A stretch of DNA of 63,758 nt, filler included, from Reticulomyxa filosa (Eukaryota; Protista; Foraminifera): the NCBI GenBank assembly GCA_000512085.1. It is 15 parts of 15 records of this genome, joined end to end, with 100 filler letters (N's around TTAATTAATTAA, not from the genome) between each part and the next. Parts side by side here need not be neighbours in the genome. Positions count along the whole stretch, not along the records: positions 25,472 to 37,561 come from ASPP01027642.1; 14 more parts are not named here. One strand, written 5' to 3'. The notes beneath the pieces were generated by a model that was given only the letters and a program-made list of their open reading frames with translations, was not told where the DNA came from and ran no database searches. This document shows positions 25,331-37,681 of the stretch, piece by piece (positions within the stretch are counted from its first letter, which is position 1; every line of letters begins with the position of its first letter). A program made the position numbers and the translations under genes.

Positions 25331-25480
25331 CTGGAAGGAGGGGGGGGAGGGGGGGGGGGGAAGATATGTTCNNNNNNNNNNNNNNNNNNNNNNNNNNNNN
25401 NNNNNNNNNNNNNNNTTAATTAATTAANNNNNNNNNNNNNNNNNNNNNNNNNNNNNNNNNNNNNNNNNNNNAAAAAAAAT

Positions 25481-25513
<33 letters not shown>

Positions 25514-25570
25514 GTGTATACATATGATTCTTTTATTCTCAAAAAAAAAAAAAAAAAAAAAAAATTGAAG

Positions 25571-28500
25571 ATATTTCGAGTGCAAACCTGGTCATTCTTA
25601 TTTTGTCCGTGTGAGTGATGTGGATTCGATTGTGAAGACACGTGCGGAAATGGAAAAGGAAAATGGCAAGCAACCAGAGATGATTCCAGAGGACCTGGAA
25701 ATGGAACCGCCGGTGCAGGATCAGCAAGCAGTGCAATGCGGAGATCGTGTGACGTTGGTGAACAATCGCACCGGCGTGGTGCGTTTTGTGGGGGCCACTG
25801 ATTTTGCACTTGGCGAAATGTATGGAATCGAGCTGGATGCGAAATTGCCGATCGGTAACGACGGGTCATTTGGGAACATTCGCTACTTCAGCACCGACCA
25901 TGGAAGAGGAATATTTGTGCGAAGAGCAGCTATCATCGCTGTGGACCCATTGCCATTGCTCGAGGAAACCGCGGAATCCAAAGATGACGCAAGCGAGAAT
26001 GTCGACATATATCGTCAAAAAACAGTGATTGAAAAAGGCAGGTCCGACAATGACAACGACGAACAAATGGAACGAATGGGAGCAATTGAAGAGGATGAAG
26101 AAGAAGAAGAAGAAGAAGAAAAAGAAGAAGAAAAAGAAAAAGAAGAAGACGTTCGGGTTGAAGTTGATGCCTATGTCACTTTGATGAATGGACAAACAGG
26201 AGTTACGTTATTTATTTTATTTACTTGTAAACAAAAAATGTACATTAAATTGTATATACATATCGTCAATCCAACAACAATGATGGAATAGTTTGTTCGA
26301 TACATTGGAGTAACGGATTTTAGCAAAGGCGAAGAAGTCCTCGGCATCGAGTTGGATCAATGGGACGTGAATGGAAACGACGGATCCAAAAATGGCAAGA
26401 AATACTTTACTTGCAAGAACGGACGTGGCATATTTGTGAAGCAAGACAGCGTGACGCGAGTATTGAAGATTCCGGTCACGTTGAAACATTTGGAATTGAA
26501 GGACTTGATGAGTAGTGATGAGCGTGACGTAAGAACGGGGAAAAAGTTGGGCTTGGAAGAACGCATCAAAATATTGGAGGAAAAGGAAAAAGAGACACAA
26601 AGAGAACAAGAGTTGCAAAAGATGATTGAAAAATTACAAGTCGGCGACCGTGTTGAATTGGACCGATCTAGAACTGGTATTTGTTTGTTTATTTGAGTGT
26701 GATATGAAAAGAAAAGATGATTTATTTAATAATAATAAAAATAAAAAAAATAATAAAGGAACTGTTCGATATATCGCACCCGTGGAAATTGCAAGTGGTG
26801 GTGAAGCCATTGGTATCGAATTAGATAAGATTTCCCCACAGGGACACGACGGCAAAGGCAAATTTGCCACGAAAGATGGCTTTGGTATATTTGTGCGTGC
26901 CAAAGAGATCAAAAAAGTCCTTGTACGCCAGTCAATGGAATACGGAGCGAATGGTAGCAATGCGACAGGCCTTTTAACCAATGGAGAGAATATTGTTGTC
27001 CATGTCGACGATCGCGTTCGCATTCAAGGCGGTCGAACAGGTATCGTGCGTTACGTAGGCCCATTGGCTGGAATGGAAGACGCGAAGAAACAATACATTG
27101 GATTGGAGTTGGACGAATGGGATCCCAAGGCCACTTCGGGGACGTTTAAAGGAAAGGAATACTTCCGTGTCAATGCCAATAAGGGCGCCTTCATTGATGT
27201 CTTCCAAGTGGTGGAAAACCTTGGAAGCACAAATGTGACCGAAAAAAACCAAACACCGCCAAAGCCTTACGATGGCGACTTGAGTCGAGGACAGATGGTA
27301 AAGACGAAATACTATGGCATCGGCACGGTGATGTTTATGGGATTCGGGCACTTTAGCGATGGCGAAGTGATTGGATTGGAACTGAAACAATGGTGGCCCA
27401 ATGGAAGTGACGGGACAGTGGACAATAAGGAATATTTCAAATGTCCACAAGGACGTTCGTACTTTTGCTCTCGCAAAGATATTGAAAAGGTATTGACAGA
27501 GGCCGAAATCAAAGCCCTGAAAGAATCGGAAACAACAAAGAACAATGACACAAATAAACTCGTGGAAGACTGGCCCGAGCCAAAGACCAATCTGAAACGA
27601 ATGCCTGTAATCAAAGACCGCGTCCGAGTGTTTGATGGCCAAACCGGAGTAATTCAATTCATTGGGTCAGTCGACTTTGCAGAAGGAACATGGATCGGTC
27701 TCGTGTTGGACGATTTTTCCCCCAATGCAACTGACGGGACAGTGAAAAACAAGCCATACTTTCGAACAAAGCCTCAGCGTGGATTTTTCATCAAGCAAAA
27801 GTATTTGACGGAAAATCTGGGCTCCATTGTGAACACGCCTTTGGATCGTGTGGTGCTAGTGGACACCACGAATAATGAAGATGTCAAGTTCAAAGTGGGC
27901 GATCGCATTCAATTGGCGGAAGGCGGAACCGGAGTGGTGAAATACGTCGGCAGTGAGGCAGGCGAGGACGAAATGGAGCCAATTATCGGAGTCGAGTTGG
28001 ATACTTGGGATCCCAATGCCAACGATGGAAAGTTCAAAGGCAAGTCGATGTTCAAAACAAAGATGGGCAGAGGCTTGTTCACACGACGACAATCGATTAT
28101 GCAAGTGCTCCCACCCAAACTGGGACATTTGCCTCATTTGAAAGTGCTGCCTGACAAGGGCGATCGAGTGCGACTGCGATCGGGCGAGGAAGGCATTGTG
28201 CAGCGTATCGAAAAGTCTTTGACGGCGACAACCCCATCCAGTCAACAAGAGATCCAAATTGTCTTGTTGGACTCTTTCATTGGCGGTGACGGCAGCAAAC
28301 GAATTGTCAGGCTCTCCGATTTGAGTGAAAATCTCGGAAAGTATTACGACGAGCGTTATTCGAGTCTGCAAAACGAATCTTTGGAATTGAAAGTAGGCGA
28401 CCATGTGCGATTGCTGCGTGGCAAAACTGGCAAGATTAAATATATCGGCCCCGTTGGCGGAGAGATTGAAATGATTGGTATCGAATTAGATTCGTTCAAT

Positions 28501-31500
28501 CCAAGCGGACATAATGGCAAGGGCTATTTTGTGACGACCAATGGAAGAGGCTATTTCGCTAAGCGGTCCGACGTGGTTGGACTGATCGAACGACCAAATG
28601 ACACGGAGCAAGCCAAAATCCAAACGCAAAGATATCGACAAATGCGTGGATTGCAAAAAAGATTGTACAAAATCGAGCAAATCGAAAAAAACAACCATCT
28701 AGGAACGGAGTTAAATCGCAACCAAGGCCATTTCATGCAACGGAAAATGTCCATCCAGAGACAATTAAAGGACCTTACCGAGGCGTTCAACGCGAGCTAT
28801 CCTCTCGTCGAAATTGATGATGTGGTCAAACGTGAATCGGCCAATGGATCAAATGGACTCGCATTGGCTTCCGGACACGGAGCTTCACAAGTTAAAACGG
28901 GTGACAAGGTCATATTGGACAGTGGCGAAGTTGGCAAAATCATGTTTATTGGCTCTGTCAGCTTTGATGATCGCGAAATGCTTGGCATTTTATTGGACAA
29001 CTGGTCTCCCAATGGTCATAGTGGAACGGTCGATGGAACCCAATACTTTGTGGCGCCGGAAGGAAGGGGATTACTTGTGCCTTTCGACTCCATCGTGGGA
29101 CTGTTTGATGAGGAAAAAGAGGACAGCAACAAAACACCTGTGAAAAATGACCAAAGAAGAAGGTCGATGGAACTGGAGCCAGTTCGCGAAGAAAATGATG
29201 ATGACCTGAACAACGACAATGCCGACGATTTCAAAGATTTACCTGAATTGGTTGAGTTGCAAGAGGAAGAGGAACAGCATTTCTCTGATTTACCAAAAGT
29301 CGGCGAAGCAATTGCCTTTGGAGGTACAAACAAATATGTACATGTATATACATATATGTAAATATTTTTTTTTTTTTTTTTTTTGTTTATTGAAACTTTT
29401 CTTTCGTAAATACTTTTACTAATGCAAAACGATGTTTGCTTGCTTGTTGTAAAATAGGAAAATCTGGAGTGGTGAAGTACATAGGAAAGACCGAGTTTAG
29501 TAAAGACGAGCCAATGATAGGCATTGAATTGAATTCGTGGAGTGCCAATGCAACTGATGGCACATTGTTTGGAAGGAGATATTTCAATGCGGCTCCAGGC
29601 ACGGGATACTTTATTCGAAGACAGTCGTTTGCTTCATTGAAGGATATGATCAAGGACGACGATGCTCAGAAAATTCTGCGACAGGATTCACTGGCTCTGG
29701 AAAACTTTGATCCCAAATCTCTGGGCGTGTTTTACGAAAAGGGCGATCACATTGTGACGAGCGACGGATACAGCGGAAAGGTGATATTTACCGGCAAAGT
29801 GAAATTTGCTCCGCATGAAATGGTCGGATTGCATTTGGACGAATGGGACCCCAATGGTCACAATGGCACTGTCCGAGGTGAATCTACTTTGAGGTGCCTC
29901 CGGGAATGGGATGGTTTGTGCGTGCAGATAGTGTGTTGCAAGTCATTGAGAACGAGCAAGAATGGAAAAAAAGAGTAGAGGCAGAAAAAAAAAAAATAAA
30001 AAGTAAATACCGTATGAAGGTAGATGTTGGACAACGTGTGCAACTCAGAAATGGAATGCGCGGTTTGGTTCGCTTCTGTGATCGAACTGATTTCGCAAGT
30101 GGTGACAAATGGGTGGGATTGGAATTGGATGATTGGTATTACAATGCCCATGACGGAACCGTGAATAGCAAAACATACTTTACCACCAGCAAAGGACGAG
30201 GCTTTTTTGTGAAGCTCGAAGAGATTTCCATTGTCCTACGAAAAGAAGAAGAAAAGAGAGCGCAATCGCTGCGAGTGATGCCGGAATTGGGAGATCGCGT
30301 TCGAACTGTTCGTGGCAAAACGGGAGTGGTTAAGTTCATTGGAGAAGTCGATTTTTCCAGTGGCGCTTTGATCGGAGTGGAATTGGATCGTTGGAGTCCC
30401 AATGCTGGAGATGGGTCTGTCAATGGCGTCGAATATTTCAAGTGTTTGGTCGGACGTGGCTATTTCACCACATTGTCGCATTTGGTTGAAAACCTGGGCT
30501 CAACTCTGCCAGCTTCACTGCAGTCCAACGCAGGTAACGATGTCCAAGCGCAACAAAAGGAATTCCCACCTGATATCAAGCCCGGAGATAAAGTCAAATT
30601 GGCACAAGGAAAAGTTGGTGTTGTCCGTTATATCGGCACTACAGAAGAAACTGGAAATGAAGAAATTGTCGGAATTGAGTTTTGTTTTTTTTTCCGTCCT
30701 GCGTTTACTTTACTATTTGCATTATTTTCACATTTGTTTGTTTGTTTCTTTTTTTATTAAATACAATAAGATTGGATTCGTGGGACGCCAATGCTCGAGA
30801 TGGCACTCTTGGCTCCAAGAAACTCTTTGATGCCAACAAAGGAAAGGGATACTTCACTCGACGCAAGTCGATCGCCAATGTGGTGAAAACACACATCAAG
30901 GAAGGAGGGTTTGCAAAGTTGAAAAATTTAGTGGCGACGCCCAAATACAATGGCCAAATTGTAAAGATCCTTGGATACGCGCCTGAAAAGCAGCGATGGA
31001 AAGTCCGATTGCATGAGGACAAGAAAGACAACAAACTGTTGGGAGTGAAAGAAGAGAATTTGGCTCCAATCTTTGATTGGGAAGTGCCGCTTGAAACCGA
31101 CTTTAGAGCAGGTCATCTCACTCGAGCGCCTCTGGTGGGCGACCGTGTACGCACCAAAACAGGGAAAACGGGTATTGTTCGCTTTGTGGGTGAAACTGAA
31201 TTTGCACGGGACCAATTGAGCATCGGATTGGAGTTAGATCAATGGCATCCCTCTGCACACAACGGCACGGTTAATGACAAAGAATACTTTAAATGCAAAG
31301 AGGGACATGGCTATTTCGCCAGCATAGAACAGTTGGTGGCCAATTTGGGACAATTTGATGAAAGCGAACAGGTAGCACCCTTGCCACCCAAACCAAAGTT
31401 TGCAATTGGAGATAAAGTAAAACTGGCTCGAGGCAAGATTGGAGTGGTCAAATTCATCGGAGTCACTGAGTTTAGCAAAGGAGAAGAAATTGTTGGCTTG

Positions 31501-34500
31501 GAGTTATCCCAATGGACAGAAGGAGCGCACGATGGGAAAATTCGTGACAAACGCTATTTCAAGACAAAGCCTGGTCGCGGATATTTCACCCACAAAGGGT
31601 CCATTGTGAATTTGGTGTTGCCAGATGCAAATACAGCCAATCAAAGCAGCCGACTGCGGATCCGTCGTGAAATTAAAAAGACCAAACGAAGACTACATCA
31701 AATTGCAGTGTTGGAAACACGTCGCGAAAAAGGCGAAACGTTGACATCCAAACAACTCCAAAGAATTGCTAGCAAAGACGCATTGTCGAAAAAGTTGAAT
31801 GAATTGGAAAATGGAAACTTTGACTTTGAGGCTCAAGATAGAGAAAGAAAGGAAATGAGTCTTAAAAAGCGTAATCAACTGTTGGAAAGGAAGGCCACAA
31901 TGGATTTGGGCGCCAAAAAATGGACAGTACCGGTAAGCGTTGGTGATGCCGTACAATTGGAGAATGGAGCCACTGGTGTCGTGAAGTGGATTGGCAAAGT
32001 ACCATTTCTCACGGATGATGTACTTGGCTTGTTAATGGACACAACCAATCCCAACTACCACAATGGAGAGTTGGATGGAAAGGAATACTTCAAAACACCA
32101 AATGGCCGAGGATACTTTGCGTTGCAGGAAGAAATACAAAAGAACATGGGAACCACTAAGCGCACGCGACCAAAACACAATCAAGTATCAACAGAAACAT
32201 CTCAGAACAATGTAAACGTTGGTGATGCTGTCAAGACCATGCAGGGACCTGGGAAAGTGGTTTGGAAAGGCAACGTGATTGGAGAAGATGGGAAAACAGA
32301 GGAAGAAATGCTAGGAGTGGAATTGGAAGCCTTTGATCCCAATGCAAATGATGGCTCCATTCAAGGAACCAAGTACTTTGAAAGTAAACCTGGACATGCT
32401 ATTTTCACGCGTAGAGAGTCATTGCAATTGCCGTTATCAACCGACTTTGACCAAAATCAACCGAATGGTGTTGAATTTACTCTTGGAGATCGTGTTAAAC
32501 TCGACAATGGTTGTACTGGAGTTAAGAGACCATAAAAACATTGTGTGCATATATGTATATGTATGTATATGTGTATATGTATAGGTTGTCAGATTCGTGG
32601 GTCCAGTGACATTTGAACAAAAAGAAGAAACGATCGGCATTGAGTTGGACCAATGGTCACCGAATGGAAACAACGGCAGTGTAAATGGAATAAAGTGCTT
32701 TGACTGTCCAAACATGCGAGGATTCTTTTGTTTAAGGCATCAGATAGTCGAAAATATGGGCTCGACAATTCAACCATCGCACAAAGAAGAAGAGAAAGGA
32801 AATGATAGTGGCGACAAAGATTGGCTCAACGAAAAAGGCAAGGCAGTGAAAGTGGGAGATTACGTGGAGTTGGACCGTGGACGCACTGGTGTGGTCGAGT
32901 GGATCGGCAAAACCGATTTCAACGAAGAAGAAATGCTGGGCATCGAATTGGACGAGTGGTGGATTAATGGGCATGACGGAAGTAAAGATGGAAAGAGGTA
33001 CTTCCAATGCGCCGAAGGACACGGATACTTTGCCCATCGACGTTCGATTGCAGAAATAAAGAGGGATGAGTTGCCCAAAATCGACCCAGTGATCCAAGAG
33101 ACCAATCGTCGAGTCAATCGAATCGACCGCCTTCTCAAGCATTTGAGAGATATTCAAAGATACGAACAACGATTGGCCGGTGGCGATCGATTGCATAAAG
33201 GCCAAATCGAAAAAATTCAACGCAAAGATAAGTATAAAGAGGAATTGGAACAATTGCAGAAAGCCCCGCCACCCAATTTGCAAGATATACTTTTGGAGAG
33301 ACAATATGAAGACGACACCCAAGTCCAACTTGCGAATGACATACCGATACAAGACTTGAAAGAGACACAAGCAAGAGAAAGCGAAGAAGACGAAGATGAT
33401 GATGAAAATGATGATGAAAATGATGAAAATGAAGAAAATGAAAAAGAGCAGGGAGGAAACACGGAGAATAGTAACGAACAACAACAGGGCTCTTCTCACC
33501 GAAAGAGTATTGCCGAAAACCTGATCCAAGTCAACGTTGGAGATCGAGTTCGAATATTGGGCAACAAAACTGGAATAGTCAGATACTTTGGCAATGTCGA
33601 TTTTTCCAATGAAAAGTTGGTTGGCATTGAGTTGGACAGTTGGCATCCCAATGCAACTAATGGAACTGTTCGAGGAAAAACTTATTTCAAAGTTTAGTCT
33701 TTTTTTTATATTTTTTTTTTTTTTAACCTTATAATTAAAATGTTTTTCTTTATTAAATTTCATACAAATTGCTCTGCGGGTGGTCTTAGTGCGATCGTGG
33801 TCGTGGATTCTTTGCTAAAGAAAGCCTCATCCTTGAGAACCTTGGACGTGAGGTATGTGCTTATACAAATGCTTATCTCCTTTTGTTTTATTGGCATTAT
33901 TATTATTATTATTATTATATTGTTATTTGTTTGCATGTCTTTGAATCAGGACATGCAAAAAGAAACGACAAACGACGAGGAAGAAGGAACTCCACCCCCA
34001 CAAGCTCCCTTGCCCAAAATTCAATTCAAAATTGGCGATTATGTGAAGTTGGCTCGTGGAAAAACAGGTGTGGTAAAGTACATTGGAGAAACTGCATTCA
34101 CGCAAGGCGAAATTATTGGACTGGAGTTGGACACGTGGGACCCTCATGGACACAATGGGACAATCCGCAGCAGAAAATATTTCGAAGCCAACGAAGGACG
34201 CGGCTATTTCACGAAACGAGAACTGATATCCCAAGTCGTAATTCCTTTAGTTAAGCCGATTGACTTAAAGGCTGTCAATGTAACCTTCCAGTTGCGACCC
34301 TTTAAATTTGGAGATCGTGTGCAAATCAAAGAAAATGGAAGAACTGGTATCGTCAAATACGTCGGATTCCCATCATTTACTGACGGCGAAGTGATCGGAA
34401 TTGAGTTGGATGAGTGGTCCATGGATGCACACGACGGCATTGTCAACAACGAGGTCATTTTCGAGACATTCCCGGGACGTGGCACATTTGCAAGACGAGA

Positions 34501-35511
34501 CGATATTGAAAAGTATGATCCCGAGCAAAAGAAATTGGAAGAGGCCAAAATCCAATTAAAACTTGGTGATAAGATTAAACTTACCAATAACCGCACAGGA
34601 GTGGTAAAATATATTGGTGCAGATCATTTATCTGATCAAGAAATTATTGGAGTCGAATTAGGTTTTTTTTTTTTTTTTGTACTTGTTCAATGTATTATGT
34701 ATGCTAATGCATTTGAGCACAAACATTCTCTCTTTTTTTTTTGATCAGATGCATGGACCCCTGGCGCGCACGATGGTGTTTATAACAACTATCGATATTT
34801 CCAAGTATTGCTGTGTTTATATTTTATGTTTTGTGCTATCGTTTACAGAAATTGTGTTAACACAAATAGTGCCCAATTGGAAGAGGCATCTTTGCACGAA
34901 GATCGTCTGTGATTTCGGTAGAGCCTGTTCCAGAAGTTGAAACCAAATCAGACGACAGCGAAGATGAAAGAGATGAAATAAGATATGACATTGGTGACAG
35001 AGTGCAAATTGACACCGGAAAAAAAGGAGTTGCGTTGGGACATTTTGTCTCTTTGTTTATTCTTCTTATTATTGTTAAATGAAGCATTGCCATACATGAA
35101 CGGCAATAACTTAACAGACTATACGATACATTGGCAAAGACACTAAAGGAGAAGAAGTATATGGAATAGAATTGGATGAGAAAATACCCAAAGGAACAGA
35201 TGGACGTCATAACAACGTGAGATACTTTAGTTGCAGGTTTTCATTCATTTAAAAAAATATATATATATATATATGTATATAAATAATTGCTTACAAATAT
35301 AAATGTTTTGTATTATATCACTTTGTGAAAAAGACTTGGACGTGGTATATTTGTACGAAAGCACGTAATTGTAAGCATAGTGCAAGAAGATGATCTTCCA
35401 AAATTTGTCACAGGAGACAGAATTAAGTTAAGTCGCGGACGCTATGGTTACATCAAATATATCGAAGAAACAGAAGAAGGCGAGGTATTTGGCATTGAAA
35501 TCGGTATAAAT

Positions 35512-35542
<31 letters not shown>

Positions 35543-37514
35543 CTATGTAATATTTTCAATTTCTGTAACTTCTATTTTGATGGAGATGAGAGAAAGGAAA
35601 GAATTCATTAAAAAGTAATATGAAATAATATTTGTATGTGTGCGTAATGAATCTATATAGATGTGTGGGGCGGAGACATAGCCAATGAGGAAGCAGGAAG
35701 AACAAGACGCTTCAGTGTGAAACACGGATACCCAATAACGCGATCTCGTTCGAGTATGACAGGGAATTTATTGTCTCCAGAACTTGATGAGACCGCTCCT
35801 TCCACGCCCACGGATGACAAGAAAGAAAGCAATGCAAAAGGATTTTCGTTGGGAGAGACAGTGGAATTGACGAATGGATTAATCGGAACAATACGATTTA
35901 TTGGACCAATGTACTTTGCCAAGGACGAGGAATGGATTGGTGTTGAGCTCCACGATGGATGGGGCAAGCATGACGGAGCGTATCAAGGAGTGAGATACTT
36001 CACTTGTCCTCCCAAGCGTGGTGTGTTTGTCAAAGAAGTAAAACGTCTCCGAGAAGACGATCCTAGTCGACAGTACCTGAAACGCCGATGTCCAGAATGT
36101 GAAGGCCAGTTTTTGAAGTTGCGTAACCCTGCGAAAGCCTATCGAGGTATGGGCATGGTGTGCGATCGTTGTCATCGTCACGGAACCCAATTCTCGGAAA
36201 ATGATTGGTTTTTCCAATGTTCGAAATGTGAACAAATCGACCTGTGCATGGACTGTATGCTAAAACTGCATCCCTCAGAGCCTCAACGCGAAGATGACGT
36301 CGCTGAAGTCCGGGCCAAATGTCGTCTACTCGATGGACAATGGGTGTTTGAAGAAATTGATGTGGACGACGCCGTGTCTGAATTGTCCCAGAAAGATCAG
36401 CAAACAAAAGGAGAAGAACCACAAACAGCACCAGCAACGACAACAACCGAAGCACAAAAACCACAACAAAGTGTTATTTCCACTATCATTGAAGAAGACA
36501 AAGAAGATGACAATGATTTTGAACCTCTTGCTCCAAAGACATTACAGGCGCAAGTGTCATCTAAATTCCATTTATCTGAAGTTCTTTATTTTTTCTTTTA
36601 TTTTTTTTTTTTTTTTTGCTATACAACTCCAGTATAAATAATCCAAATTTCAAACTAAAATAATAATAATAATGGATAGATCAGGGCAGTCTTCGACTTC
36701 TTCGATCGTGACGAAGATGGGCTGCTGCACACAACAGATATTGACGATATGTGGGCTGCATCAAGGCATGAATTGGATCGAGAATACTTTATTTCTCCTT
36801 TAAGTTTTGAACAATTTCAAAGAGCATGGAATACCGTGTCCGATGATGCCAGCCAAAATCTATTTCAATACCTCGAATTACACAAAAACAAGCTGGTACA
36901 GATAAACTTTCTGTCTTTCCAAAAATAAGTATATGTATATGTAATGTATGTGTACGTATACACGCTCACACCGCATGAAGTGCTTTTGTTGTTGTTCGTT
37001 CGTTTATACTTTAAAAAAAAACTAGGCCAAAGGTGGTCGTAAGTCAATGGAATTTTTGGAAAAAGTACGAGATATATTTGAATACTTTGACAGAAATGTA
37101 GACGGTACATTGACAATTGAGGACATGGCGCGCATAGTCCCATTAATAAGCGTATCACTTGGAGTAGATCAGGGAAAGAAATGGTTCGACCCTCCTTGCG
37201 ACTTTATCAAGTTCCTGTCTCGAATGCAGGCATTGGGTGAAGATGTCACAAAACCGATCATCGATCGCTTAGTCCATCACATGAAGCTGCGTGTCAAAGA
37301 CGTGTTTTTCTTATTTACACATGGCACACATGAAATGATGACAGAGCAAGAATTCTTACAAATGTATGCATATGCATTGAAGAAGGAATTGGATTGGCGA
37401 AGAGTTTATCGCTTCCCGTGTTCACAGTCCGAATTTGTCGAAAAATGGAATCATTTGGGAGTCTTTGAACAGCACGGAATTTTGATGGAAACAGAAAAAC
37501 GACTGACAAAAGAA
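25571..37514 (+). CDS. Giant tandem CAP-Gly protein (~28 domains) with helical hairpins, a ZZ-like zinc finger and EF-hands; truncated at both ends
   Basis: Repeated xGDxVxL..GxTGxV[KR][FY]xG..F....IG[IVL]ELD.W.PNxxDG....YF....GRGxF units across consecutive + strand exons. The last unit has canonical WIGVELHDGWGKHDG..GVRYFTC..GVFV. It is followed by CxxC..CxxC..CxxC..LCxxC and the EF loops DRDEDGLL and DRNVDGTL. Confidence 0.93.
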
Positions 37515-37520
37515 GTTTTG

Positions 37521-37554
<34 letters not shown>

Positions 37555-37681
37555 GGTTTTTNNNNNNNNNNNNNNNNNNNNNNNNNNNNNNNNNNNNNNN
37601 NNNNNTTAATTAATTAANNNNNNNNNNNNNNNNNNNNNNNNNNNNNNNNNNNNNNNNNNNNAAAAAAAAAAAAAAAAAAAG

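What the first reader, a model, noticed from the sequence alone, without database searches (positions are those of the whole stretch)
28630..33256. Three PYM/eIF2A-C-terminus-like helical hairpins embedded in the CAP-Gly array
Seen in sequence: three related ~50-aa inserts, each directly after a B-type domain. They are RQMRGLQKRLYKIEQIEK..GTELNRNQGHFMQRKMSIQRQLKDL (28630-28779), REIKKTKRRLHQIAVLETRREKGETLTSKQLQRIASKDALSKKLNEL (31657-31809) and RIDRLLKHLRDIQRYEQRLAGGDRLHKGQIEKIQRKDKYKEELEQL (33101-33256). Established: the pattern K+LRxIxxL..G..L...Q..Kh.+K..h..EL is shared by the C-termini of PYM1/WIBG and eIF2A, and the PYM C-terminus associates with the 40S ribosome. Inference: the scaffold might tether ribosomes or mRNPs to microtubules, a local-translation system in a giant syncytial cell.
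Basis: partly seen in the sequence, partly recalled or inferred. Interest (0 to 1): 0.85.

Follow-up and report, generated by a model that had tools for sequence, protein, structure and literature searches.

The report
PYM/eIF2A/Caprin-type hairpins in CAP-Gly giant
A giant protein of the foraminifer Reticulomyxa filosa, built from about 27 CAP-Gly (microtubule-associated) domains, carries three genuine copies of a small helical hairpin otherwise found at the ends of the ribosome/mRNP-associated proteins PYM, eIF2A and Caprin, which makes a microtubule-to-translation link testable but not yet shown.

Summary
The three roughly 50-aa inserts lie at the stated coordinates, inside long exons, and each follows a CAP-Gly domain.

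The piece is a whole 12,090-bp Reticulomyxa filosa contig. It encodes ETO05945.1 (RFI_31450, "hypothetical protein").

The resemblance to PYM and eIF2A is homology, not a generic coiled coil:
- A profile of the three inserts alone finds human eIF2A as its only significant PDB hit (E 1e-6).
- Against 1.84 billion proteins it finds 276 hits. The top 150 include 21 Mago-bind (PYM) proteins, one eIF2A, and KH/GYF/RRM proteins.
- A reciprocal PYM+eIF2A profile finds only the three inserts in the six-frame translation (E 4e-11 to 3e-8).
- Composition-matched shuffles never come close.
- The wider family profile also hits the N-lobe hairpin of Caprin-2 HR1 (E 3e-5), which is also the top structural match of the AlphaFold model.

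The CAP-Gly-then-hairpin unit is conserved in five R. filosa paralogues and in Nonionella stella.

Binding to 40S subunits or mRNPs, and therefore microtubule tethering of translation, remains an inference from what is reported for PYM and eIF2A. It is plausible (about 0.35-0.4) and untested. This is a new architecture for a known but unnamed module.

The parts
25473..36271 (+). Multi-exon gene for a giant CAP-Gly array (R. filosa RFI_31450 / ETO05945.1, annotated as 2604 aa partial). The real gene continues beyond the annotated stop, through about 27 CAP-Gly domains, to a Cys-rich C-terminal region.
   Evidence: Pfam CAP_GLY E 1.8e-82, 3.9e-60, 6e-40 and others. jackhmmer map of 30 CAP-Gly pieces from 25569 to 36040. 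Identity to P0001 and exon map.
28618..28785 (+). Hairpin 1 (type 1; P0001 aa 1011-1066). PYM/eIF2A/Caprin-type helix-loop-helix module, net charge +7. It has F in place of the family's near-invariant K47.
   Evidence: Reciprocal PYM+eIF2A profile E 1.1e-8. 34.7 bits against a shuffle maximum of 12.0. Signature table. Own paralogue type in P0003 and P0062.
31645..31815 (+). Hairpin 2 (type 2; P0001 aa 1943-1999). Best match to the PYM/eIF2A consensus, net charge +9.
   Evidence: Reciprocal profile E 3.6e-11. 42.7 bits against a shuffle maximum of 12.9. AlphaFold pLDDT 89 as a hairpin. Paralogue P0003:1228-1283.
33092..33262 (+). Hairpin 3 (type 3; P0001 aa 2404-2461), net charge +5. It is followed by a conserved APPPxLQ (33263-33283) and an acidic tract.
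   Evidence: Reciprocal profile E 2.8e-8. 33.1 bits against a shuffle maximum of 14.4. Paralogues P0012, P0033 and P0050 keep the hairpin and APPP.
28393..28569 (+). CAP-Gly domain immediately upstream of hairpin 1 (4-residue deletion variant, shared with paralogues P0003 and P0062).
31405..31596 (+). CAP-Gly domain immediately upstream of hairpin 2.
   Evidence: In the AlphaFold model it is joined to the hairpin by a low-confidence linker.
32852..33043 (+). CAP-Gly domain immediately upstream of hairpin 3.
33377..33442 (+). Acidic low-complexity tract (E/D/N) downstream of hairpin 3.
33692..33789 (+). GT-AG intron. The database model reads into it and stops at 33695-33697. The CAP-Gly domain cut by it is completed by mini-exon 33790-33852. 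A second intron at 33853-33949 follows.
   Evidence: The split CAP-Gly ends ...YFK at the first exon boundary and resumes CDRGRGFFAK.
36089..36271 (+). Cys-rich (CxxC ... CxxC ... CxxC ... CxxC) zinc-finger-like region after the last CAP-Gly domain, which is the only one with a canonical GKHDG.
   Evidence: Pfam gives only a weak DnaJ_CXXCXGXG match, E 0.004.

Best explanation
SHOWN. The three inserts are independently folding copies of a widespread, ancient eukaryotic helix-loop-helix module. Its signature is K-x-L-x2-I-x2-L-E-x6-G-x3-L-x3-Q-x2-K-x3-K...L-x2-L. The same module forms the C-terminus of PYM (partner of Y14-Mago), the C-terminus of eIF2A, and the first hairpin ('blade') of the Caprin HR1 domain. 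In foraminifera, CAP-Gly-plus-hairpin units occur inside giant CAP-Gly arrays and are kept in paralogues and in a second genus. Each hairpin is tethered to its CAP-Gly neighbour by a flexible linker.

INFERRED. The module keeps the same exposed polar residues (K, E, Q, K, K) in very different proteins across eukaryotes. Its best-studied carriers sit at the 40S subunit or in mRNPs. It therefore most likely docks one universally conserved partner in the 40S/mRNP neighbourhood. In this protein, three unusually basic copies (net +5 to +9) would then hang ribosomal subunits or mRNPs on a multivalent CAP-Gly scaffold that binds microtubules, tubulin tails or +TIP proteins. In the giant reticulopodial network this would serve transport or anchoring of the translation machinery.

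The homology step is about 0.95 certain. The 40S/mRNP-docking step is about 0.35-0.4. The confidence given below is for the whole chain.
For: Homology:
- The three-insert profile against PDB sequences gives one significant hit, human eIF2A C-terminus, E 1.1e-6.
- The same profile against 1.84e9 proteins gives 276 hits at E<=1e-3. Pfam on the top 150 gives Mago-bind 21, CAP_GLY 9, GNAT 4, KH 2, GYF 2, eIF2A 1, RRM_2, zf-CCHC and U11-48K.
- A reciprocal profile of 40 motifs, from 24 PYM-like proteins (20 confirmed as Mago-bind by Pfam) and one eIF2A, finds only the three inserts (E 3.6e-11, 1.1e-8, 2.8e-8; the next hit is E 1.1).
- Shuffle control: 33-43 bits against a maximum of 14.
- Each insert keeps 8-9 of the 10 family signature residues.
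- The family profile against PDB gives eIF2A at E 7e-13 and Caprin-2 HR1 at E 3e-5.

Fold:
- AlphaFold pLDDT 89, helix/loop/short helix/helix. This is the same element order as the Caprin-2 N-lobe described in PMC11480233.
- Caprin-2 8k9c_B is the top Foldseek hit (0.6 A over 51 columns) and the top VIA hit (Z 8.6).
- Independent module: the CAP-Gly+hairpin model has pLDDT 87 but pTM 0.50, and the linker is below pLDDT 50.

Conservation of the architecture:
- R. filosa paralogues RFI_03278, RFI_09516, RFI_05930, RFI_05619 and RFI_21287, and Nonionella stella P0019 (6 CAP-Gly and 2 hairpins), always show a hairpin directly after a CAP-Gly.

Function, from the literature:
- The PYM C-terminal eIF2A-like domain associates with 40S/48S in human cells (PMC4072592).
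- eIF2A binds 40S, and residues 529-556 together with the propeller restore translation inhibition (PMC10570035). By my inferred numbering offset, those residues overlap helix 1 of the motif.
- PYM1 and CAPRIN1 are proximity partners of eIF2A, and CAPRIN1 also in the 40S fraction (bioRxiv 10.1101/2025.05.22.655611).
- The foraminiferal copies are more basic than the family (+3 to +10 against +1.1 +/- 3.0).
Against: - No binding of any kind was tested here.
- 40S association of the PYM C-terminus was not reproduced in Drosophila ovaries (PMC4072592).
- The eIF2A TurboID study found no C-terminus-specific interactors.
- The eIF2A C-terminal helices alone did not inhibit translation (PMC10570035).
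- In Caprin-2 the blade region is linked to plasma-membrane localisation, not to ribosomes (PMC11480233).
- The module also occurs with GNAT, CoaE, thioredoxin and other non-RNA domains, so a universal 40S role is not implied by its architectures.
- Hairpin 1 has lost the near-invariant K47 (F instead).
- Most CAP-Gly domains here have N-[AG]-[HNT]-[DN]-G instead of GKNDG, so microtubule or EEY/F binding of the scaffold is itself unproven.
- By structure alone the hairpin is barely above generic helical hairpins (Z 8.6 against 7-8).
- No RNA-seq run was listed to confirm expression.
Confidence: 0.4

Rival explanations
1. The hairpins are true homologues of the PYM/eIF2A/Caprin module, but the module is a general-purpose protein-protein adaptor or structural hinge. 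Here it serves as a rigid spacer, an intramolecular packing element or an oligomerisation element that organises the CAP-Gly array. It has no link to ribosomes or RNA.
For: - The module occurs with many unrelated domains: GNAT, CoaE, thioredoxin, LRR, Death, SPRY.
- In Caprin-2 it is a flexible 'blade' of a dimeric scissors, proposed to accommodate different partners (PMC11480233).
- 40S binding of PYM was not seen in Drosophila (PMC4072592).
- The three types have diverged from one another (20-29% identity), and each is conserved in its own paralogues, as expected if each has its own partner.
Against: - The same exposed polar residues (K20, E29, Q44, K47, K51) are near-invariant across very different proteins and lineages. 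This argues for one common ligand rather than many.
- The AlphaFold hairpin is a self-contained intrachain antiparallel pair and does not pack on the CAP-Gly.
- RNA- and translation-related partner domains (Mago-bind, eIF2A, KH, GYF, RRM, zf-CCHC, U11-48K) make up most of the architectures that could be named.
Confidence: 0.33
2. The unusually basic hairpins act electrostatically on acidic surfaces of the cytoskeleton or membranes. They would bind the glutamate-rich tubulin tails or the microtubule lattice, strengthening or regulating CAP-Gly binding. Alternatively they would bind acidic phospholipids, or the protein's own acidic tract as an autoinhibitory switch.
For: - Net charge is +5 to +9 for the window copies and +3 to +10 for other foraminiferal CAP-Gly copies, against a family mean of +1.1.
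- An acidic E/D/N tract lies about 40 aa after hairpin 3 (33377-33442).
- In Caprin-2 a basic cluster of the same N-lobe mediates plasma-membrane localisation (PMC11480233).
- Each hairpin is always placed next to a CAP-Gly domain.
Against: - The Caprin-2 basic cluster (R200/R201) lies outside the segment homologous to the hairpin (about aa 130-180).
- Conservation of the non-basic signature (I25, E29, G36, Q44) is not explained by simple electrostatics.
- No direct data.
Confidence: 0.15
3. The resemblance is a chance or compositional similarity of generic K/E/L/Q-rich coiled-coil linkers. The three inserts are merely variable linkers between CAP-Gly domains.
For: - Pairwise identity among the inserts is low (20-29%).
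- Pfam has no model that matches them.
- The Foldseek E-value for the hairpin is not significant, and many unrelated hairpins reach Z 7-8.
Against: - Among 177,635 PDB sequences, which include many coiled coils, only eIF2A (and Caprin-2 with the family profile) match.
- 21 PYM proteins are retrieved from 1.84e9 proteins.
- The reciprocal profile is specific to the three inserts.
- 0 of 9,000 shuffles reach even half of the real score.
- Position-specific conservation holds in paralogues and in Nonionella.
Confidence: 0.02

Closest known systems
PYM / PYM1 (WIBG), C-terminal 'eIF2A-like domain' (about 54 aa)
   Same: Same sequence signature and length. 21 Pfam Mago-bind proteins are among the top 150 hits of the window-only profile. 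Many PYMs carry two tandem copies.
   Different: PYM is a roughly 200-aa protein with an N-terminal Mago-binding domain, which is absent here. In PYM the module is C-terminal. Here there are three internal copies in a protein of more than 3000 aa, and they are much more basic.
eIF2A (alternative initiation factor 2A), C-terminal helices
   Same: Only significant PDB-sequence hit of the three-insert profile (E 1.1e-6; family profile E 7e-13), aligned over 48-54 residues. A rhizarian (Cercozoa) eIF2A, P0150, carries the motif at 533-579 of 586.
   Different: eIF2A has a nine-bladed beta-propeller (Pfam PF08662), which is absent here. The motif region of eIF2A has no solved structure: 8DYS resolves residues 4-427 only (PMC10570035).
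Caprin-1/Caprin-2 HR1 domain, N-lobe ('blade') helix-loop-helix
   Same: The family profile matches Caprin-2 chain residues 33-82 (E 3e-5). The AlphaFold model of insert 2 has Caprin-2 8k9c_B as its best Foldseek hit (rmsd 0.6 A over 51 columns) and best VIA hit (Z 8.6, residues 123-184). The order of elements is the same: long helix, loop, short helix, helix.
   Different: Only the first hairpin is shared. The dimerising C-lobe of HR1, HR2/RGG and the C1q domain are absent. The window-only profile did not reach Caprin-2. The structural Z-score is not clearly above those of generic hairpins.
CAP-Gly +TIP and tubulin-chaperone proteins (CLIP-170, p150Glued, TBCB/TBCE, CYLD, KIF13B)
   Same: Pfam CAP_GLY domains with very strong scores. 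The last domain has GKHDG and is followed by a Cys-rich zinc-finger-like region, loosely reminiscent of CLIP-170's zinc knuckles.
   Different: Known CAP-Gly proteins have one to three such domains plus a long coiled coil (my knowledge). This protein has about 27 domains and no long coiled coil. Most domains replace the K and N of GKNDG. It carries PYM/eIF2A-type hairpins, an architecture found here only in Foraminifera.

Membership tests
PYM/eIF2A C-terminal hairpin module (the 'eIF2A-like domain' of Diem et al. 2007; no Pfam model) | Significant, reciprocal sequence-profile match to the PYM and eIF2A C-termini. | tested here: met
   E 1.1e-6 to eIF2A; 21 Mago-bind, 1 eIF2A in the top 150; reciprocal E 4e-11 to 3e-8, next hit E 1.1; shuffles.
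PYM/eIF2A C-terminal hairpin module (the 'eIF2A-like domain' of Diem et al. 2007; no Pfam model) | Signature residues K20, L22, I25, L28, E29, G36, L40, Q44, K47, K51 (each at least 80% conserved in 136 non-CAP-Gly instances). | tested here: met
   Insert 2 has 8 exact and 2 K-to-R. Insert 1 has 8 exact, L28I and K47F. Insert 3 has 9 exact and L28Y.
PYM/eIF2A C-terminal hairpin module (the 'eIF2A-like domain' of Diem et al. 2007; no Pfam model) | Self-contained antiparallel helix-loop-helix fold. | tested here: met
   AlphaFold pLDDT 89. pLDDT is 94-96 for the hairpin even with a 14-sequence foraminiferal alignment. This is a prediction only.
PYM/eIF2A C-terminal hairpin module (the 'eIF2A-like domain' of Diem et al. 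2007; no Pfam model) | Association with the 40S subunit / 48S complex (the functional property reported for human PYM). | not testable with these tools
   Literature only (PMC4072592, PMC10570035). Not reproduced for Drosophila PYM.
PYM (partner of Y14 and Mago) | N-terminal Mago-binding domain (Pfam PF09282). | tested here: not met
   Pfam on the three long exons and nine other ORFs finds CAP_GLY as the only significant domain of the gene, and no Mago-bind. The protein is not a PYM.
eIF2A | Nine-bladed beta-propeller (Pfam PF08662). | tested here: not met
   absent. The protein is not an eIF2A.
Caprin HR1 domain | Full HR1: N-lobe hairpin plus dimerising C-lobe (six helices). | tested here: not met
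   Only the N-lobe hairpin aligns (profile positions 10-59 to chain residues 33-82; model to residues 123-184). The inserts are about 55 aa and are flanked by CAP-Gly domains. The protein is not a Caprin.
CAP-Gly domain proteins (Pfam PF01302) | Domain-level match above the Pfam gathering threshold. | tested here: met
   271.6, 200.1 and 135.4 bits, among others, against a cutoff of 26.5.
CAP-Gly domain proteins (Pfam PF01302) | Canonical GKNDG loop used for EEY/F tail recognition. This is a functional feature, not a membership feature. | tested here: inconclusive
   alignment: most domains have N-[AG]-[HNT]-[DN]-G. Only the last domain (35849-36040) has GKHDG. The consequence for tubulin or EB binding is unknown.

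The most novel reading that the evidence does not exclude
The PYM/eIF2A/Caprin hairpin is a universal eukaryotic docking module for the 40S subunit (or a 40S-proximal mRNP factor). Foraminifera have grafted three or more copies of it onto giant multivalent CAP-Gly scaffolds. This would create a dedicated, motor-independent tether that loads ribosomal subunits or mRNPs onto the microtubule network of the reticulopodia. It would be a mechanism for long-range distribution and local translation in a giant syncytial cell, with no described counterpart.
Probability: 0.3. Interest if true: 0.85.

Novelty: new variant of a known kind. Interest (0 to 1): 0.62.

Why it matters
1. It defines, from sequence statistics, a discrete and ancient roughly 50-aa module. 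The module is shared by three families studied separately: PYM, eIF2A and Caprin HR1. It has no Pfam model. The 2024 Caprin-2 structure paper states that HR1 is 'so far only observed' in Caprins (PMC11480233). I found no paper linking all three by this module, though my one search for it was not exhaustive. The Caprin-2 crystal structure therefore becomes a template for the unresolved C-termini of PYM and eIF2A.

2. It shows that the module has been recruited into a cytoskeletal scaffold in Foraminifera, organisms known for extreme microtubule-based transport. This gives a concrete, cheap test (hairpin pull-down of 40S or RNA) of whether translation machinery is physically coupled to microtubules there. 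It also helps to settle what the module binds in PYM, eIF2A and Caprin, which is still disputed.

3. It corrects the database gene model.

Tried and rejected
- Pfam on the isolated inserts at E<=10 gave only noise (PTHB1_hp E 0.077, DUF919 E 0.33). There is no curated model.
- The ESM Atlas feature search of insert 2 returned unnamed 'hypothetical protein' clusters at scores of 0.90 or less. It was uninformative.
- The look-up of sequencing runs (RNA) listed no run, so expression and splicing could not be checked and read laying was not used.
- Foldseek E-values for a 65-residue hairpin are not significant (best 0.86). VIA-align Z-scores do not separate Caprin-2 (8.6) from designed or unrelated hairpins (7-8). 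Structure alone cannot prove homology, so I rest that claim on the sequence profiles.
- The second listing of cluster members on other family members returned almost no names or taxa (Euglena longa, metagenomes) and added little.
- Literature searches for Reticulomyxa + CAP-Gly found 0 papers, for 'eIF2A-like domain' 1 paper, and for PYM1 + 40S + C-terminal domain nothing relevant.
- I considered that the hairpin might pack onto its CAP-Gly neighbour as a composite domain. I rejected this on pTM 0.50 and a linker below pLDDT 50.
- I considered a fourth hidden copy. None exists in any frame.
- The numbering offset between the 8DYS chain (603 aa) and native eIF2A (585 aa) is my inference. Therefore the overlap of the motif's first helix with the functional 529-556 segment is approximate.

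Full report
**What the locus is.** The piece (25472-37561) is exactly 12,090 bp. It is the whole contig that encodes GenBank ETO05945.1, 'hypothetical protein RFI_31450, partial' of the foraminifer Reticulomyxa filosa. That protein (P0001, 2604 aa) was retrieved by the profile search. It is 100% identical to the window translation across hairpin 1 and maps exon by exon onto the + strand.

Pfam finds CAP_GLY as the only significant domain of the gene. Scores are 271.6 bits with 7 stretches in ORF 26626-29358, 200.1 bits with 4 stretches in 30682-32532, and 135.4 bits with 3 stretches in 32597-33694, with further copies in six other + strand ORFs. An iterated search maps 30 CAP-Gly pieces, about 27 domains, from 25569 to 36040; some are split by introns.

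The database model ends at a stop at 33695-33697, but that stop lies in an intron. The exon ends ...YFK at 33691. A GT-AG intron (33692-33789) follows. The mini-exon 33790-33852 completes the interrupted CAP-Gly (CDRGRGFFAK...). A second GT-AG intron (33853-33949) restores the frame of the next CAP-Gly domains. The real protein is therefore longer than annotated. It ends with a GKHDG CAP-Gly and a Cys-rich region.

**Checking the observation.**
- Each lies inside a long uninterrupted exon, 15-20 residues after a CAP-Gly domain, with another CAP-Gly downstream.
- They align without ambiguity. Ten columns are invariant, although pairwise identity is only 20-29%.
- An HMM of the three finds no other copy in any of the six frames of the piece. 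The next best score is below 5 bits.
- The 'B-type' label for the preceding CAP-Gly domains is only loosely supported. They are among each other's nearest neighbours, but they share that clade with a domain that has no hairpin.

**Is the PYM/eIF2A resemblance real?** Yes. Five lines of evidence agree.
1. A profile built from only the three window inserts, searched against all 177,635 distinct PDB chain sequences at E<=10, returns one significant hit. It is human eIF2A, chain residues 553-600, E 1.1e-6. It returns none of the many coiled-coil proteins in the PDB.
2. The same profile, searched exhaustively against 1.84 billion representative proteins, gives 276 hits at E<=1e-3. Pfam annotation of the best 150 gives Mago-bind (that is, PYM) in 21, CAP_GLY in 9, GNAT in 4, KH and GYF in 2, and eIF2A in 1, plus RRM_2, zf-CCHC, U11-48K zinc finger and assorted others. 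Twenty of 24 candidates picked by an N-terminal RxDG[ST]x[RK] pattern are confirmed as Mago-bind. P0150, from a cercozoan, is a bona fide eIF2A with the motif at residues 533-579 of 586.
3. Reciprocally, an HMM made from 40 motif instances, taken from those 24 PYM-like proteins and that one eIF2A and containing no CAP-Gly protein, was searched against the six-frame translation of the piece. It finds exactly the three inserts (E 3.6e-11, 1.1e-8, 2.8e-8), and the next hit is at E 1.1. This test is partly circular, because those proteins were selected by the window profile. The PDB result is not circular.
4. With the same HMM the real inserts score 34.7, 42.7 and 33.1 bits. The best of 3,000 residue shuffles of each reaches 12.0, 12.9 and 14.4 bits. 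Composition does not explain the match.
5. In 136 family instances from non-CAP-Gly proteins, ten columns are at least 80% conserved (K20, L22, I25, L28, E29, G36, L40, Q44, K47, K51). The inserts keep 8-9 of them exactly. The exceptions are K-to-R twice in insert 2, L28I and K47F in insert 1, and L28Y in insert 3.

**The Caprin link and the fold.** A deeper family profile (150 instances, alignment A5) again hits eIF2A in the PDB (E 7.1e-13). It also hits human Caprin-2 HR1 (8K9C and 8K9D, E 3e-5), over chain residues 33-82.

AlphaFold2 with A5 predicts insert 2 as a long helix (2-32), a six-residue loop carrying the invariant G...L, a short helix (39-46) and a third helix (48-60). Mean pLDDT is 89.3. 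This is the element order described for the 'blade' N-lobe of Caprin-2 HR1: alpha1, short alpha2, alpha3 (PMC11480233).

Against 350,542 PDB chains, the top Foldseek match is Caprin-2 8k9c_B (rmsd 0.6 A over 51 columns, TM 0.76 by query, probability 0.99), although the E-value is only 0.86 for so short a query. VIA-align also ranks it first (Z 8.6, Caprin-2 residues 123-184), but unrelated and designed hairpins reach Z 7-8. Structure is therefore consistent with homology but not decisive on its own.

The eIF2A motif has no solved structure, because 8DYS resolves only residues 4-427 (PMC10570035). Caprin-2 is thus the only experimental template for this module that my searches found.

**Independence of the module.** A model of the CAP-Gly plus hairpin-2 unit was built with a 14-sequence alignment of foraminiferal units. 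Both parts are confident (mean pLDDT 87; the hairpin blocks are 94-96). The linker residues 77-80 fall below 50, and pTM is only 0.50. The hairpin is therefore a separate module on a flexible tether, not an extension of the CAP-Gly fold.

**Evolutionary context.** The nine CAP-Gly proteins in the top 150 are these:
- the window's own product;
- five other R. filosa proteins: RFI_03278, RFI_09516, RFI_05930, RFI_05619 and RFI_21287;
- one protein from the foraminifer Nonionella stella, with 6 CAP-Gly domains and 2 hairpins;
- two from unnamed environmental assemblies.

A window-derived CAP-Gly HMM flags two further short fragments. In every case the hairpin follows directly after a CAP-Gly domain.

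Each of the three window hairpins has its own closest type among the paralogues: type 1 in P0003 and P0062, type 2 in P0003:1228-1283, and type 3 in P0012, P0033 and P0050. Lineage-specific flanks are conserved too (EAFNxxYP, NGNF, APPPxLQ), as are peculiarities of the upstream CAP-Gly, such as a 4-residue deletion in type 1. The three copies are therefore old, distinct and maintained. CAP-Gly-plus-hairpin units have been propagated as units.

The foraminiferal copies are markedly basic. Net charge is +5, +7 and +9 in the window and +3 to +10 in the relatives, against +1.1 +/- 3.0 for the rest of the family.

**How it most likely works.** The homology and the architecture are shown. The mechanism is inferred.

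Reported in the literature:
[quoted passage not shown] 2007).
- eIF2A binds 40S directly. A construct of the propeller plus residues 529-556 restores translation inhibition (PMC10570035). By my inferred 18-residue tag offset, that segment overlaps helix 1 of the motif.
- The eIF2A C-domain has been assigned mRNA binding (PMC6208778).
- In proximity labelling, PYM1 and CAPRIN1 are among eIF2A's neighbours, and CAPRIN1 also in the 40S fraction (bioRxiv 10.1101/2025.05.22.655611).

The module keeps the same polar residues in otherwise unrelated proteins. Most partner domains that can be named are RNA- or translation-related. The best-supported function is therefore docking to a universal component of the 40S/mRNP neighbourhood. 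Three such sites on a multivalent CAP-Gly scaffold would then couple ribosomal subunits or mRNPs to the microtubule system. I put about 0.35-0.4 on this.

Caveats:
- Drosophila PYM did not show 40S association (PMC4072592).
- The eIF2A C-terminus alone was inactive, and no C-terminus-specific interactors were found (PMC10570035).
- The Caprin-2 blade is linked to membrane localisation (PMC11480233).
- The module also accompanies GNAT, CoaE and other metabolic domains.
- Most CAP-Gly domains here lack the K and N of GKNDG. By established knowledge of CAP-Gly/EEY-F recognition, this leaves their tubulin-tail binding open.

The rivals are a generic adaptor/hinge role (about 0.33) and an electrostatic role towards tubulin tails, membranes or the protein's own acidic tract at 33377-33442 (about 0.15). 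Chance similarity is excluded (about 0.02).

**Comparison with known systems and novelty.** The protein is not a PYM (no Mago-bind domain), not an eIF2A (no propeller) and not a Caprin (no HR1 C-lobe). It shares only the hairpin module with them. It is a CAP-Gly protein by Pfam, but with about 27 domains instead of the one to three typical of CLIP-170, p150Glued, TBCB/E or CYLD (my knowledge).

The database entries are 'hypothetical protein' or 'CAP-Gly domain-containing protein'. The searchable library holds no paper that mentions both Reticulomyxa and CAP-Gly. Pfam has no model for the hairpin.

I therefore class the finding as a new variant of a known kind: a known but unnamed module in an undescribed architecture. 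A by-product is explicit evidence that the Caprin HR1 N-lobe belongs to the PYM/eIF2A module family.

**What led nowhere.** No RNA-seq run was listed, so expression and splicing were not verified. The Atlas feature search and a second cluster look-up added no names.

Noticed in passing
window 33692-33949: The GenBank model ETO05945.1 stops at 33695-33697 by reading into a GT-AG intron (33692-33789). A 63-nt mini-exon (33790-33852) completes the split CAP-Gly, and a second intron (33853-33949) follows. The gene continues for at least 2.3 kb more, so the true protein is well over 3000 aa.
   Followed up: partly
window 25737-36040 (all CAP-Gly domains): Almost every CAP-Gly domain replaces the canonical GKNDG loop with N-[AG]-[HNT]-[DN]-G (for example NATDG, NGHDG, SAHNG). 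Only the last domain (35849-36040) has GKHDG. Whether these domains still bind EEY/F tails is open.
   Followed up: partly
window 36089-36271: The Cys-rich region after the last CAP-Gly (four CxxC pairs plus His) looks like a ZZ/treble-clef-type zinc finger. Pfam gives only a weak DnaJ_CXXCXGXG match (E 0.004). It is reminiscent of the zinc knuckles that end CLIP-170.
   Followed up: no
window 30904-31071: A roughly 56-aa non-CAP-Gly insert lies between two CAP-Gly domains, running from GGFAKLKNLV to GVKEENLAPI. It has the look of a small beta domain (SH3/Tudor-like 'G..V.I.G......W.V.L') and no Pfam match at E<=0.01.
   Followed up: no
window 33377-33442: A strongly acidic E/D/N low-complexity tract lies about 40 residues after the basic hairpin 3. 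It could be a partner for an intramolecular electrostatic switch.
   Followed up: no
window 37026-37559: A downstream + strand ORF has a weak EF-hand match (E 1e-4) and runs to the contig end. It is either the start of a neighbouring gene or a further exon. Not resolved.
   Followed up: no
P0002, P0004, P0025, P0034 (hits): A set of proteins from unnamed eukaryotic assemblies carry two or three copies of the same hairpin. Pfam finds a GNAT acetyltransferase domain in four of the top 150 hits; it was checked per protein only for P0002, where it is C-terminal, so assigning it to the other three is my inference from their similar motifs. Two roughly 1800-aa proteins (P0064, P0128) combine the hairpin with GYF and KH domains. 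P0064 is labelled as a Flavobacteriales MAG protein, which is probably a binning error for a eukaryotic contig.
   Followed up: partly
alignment A4 /: Many PYM proteins (for example P0005, P0007, P0011, P0015) carry two tandem copies of the hairpin rather than the single C-terminal copy described for human and fly PYM.
   Followed up: no
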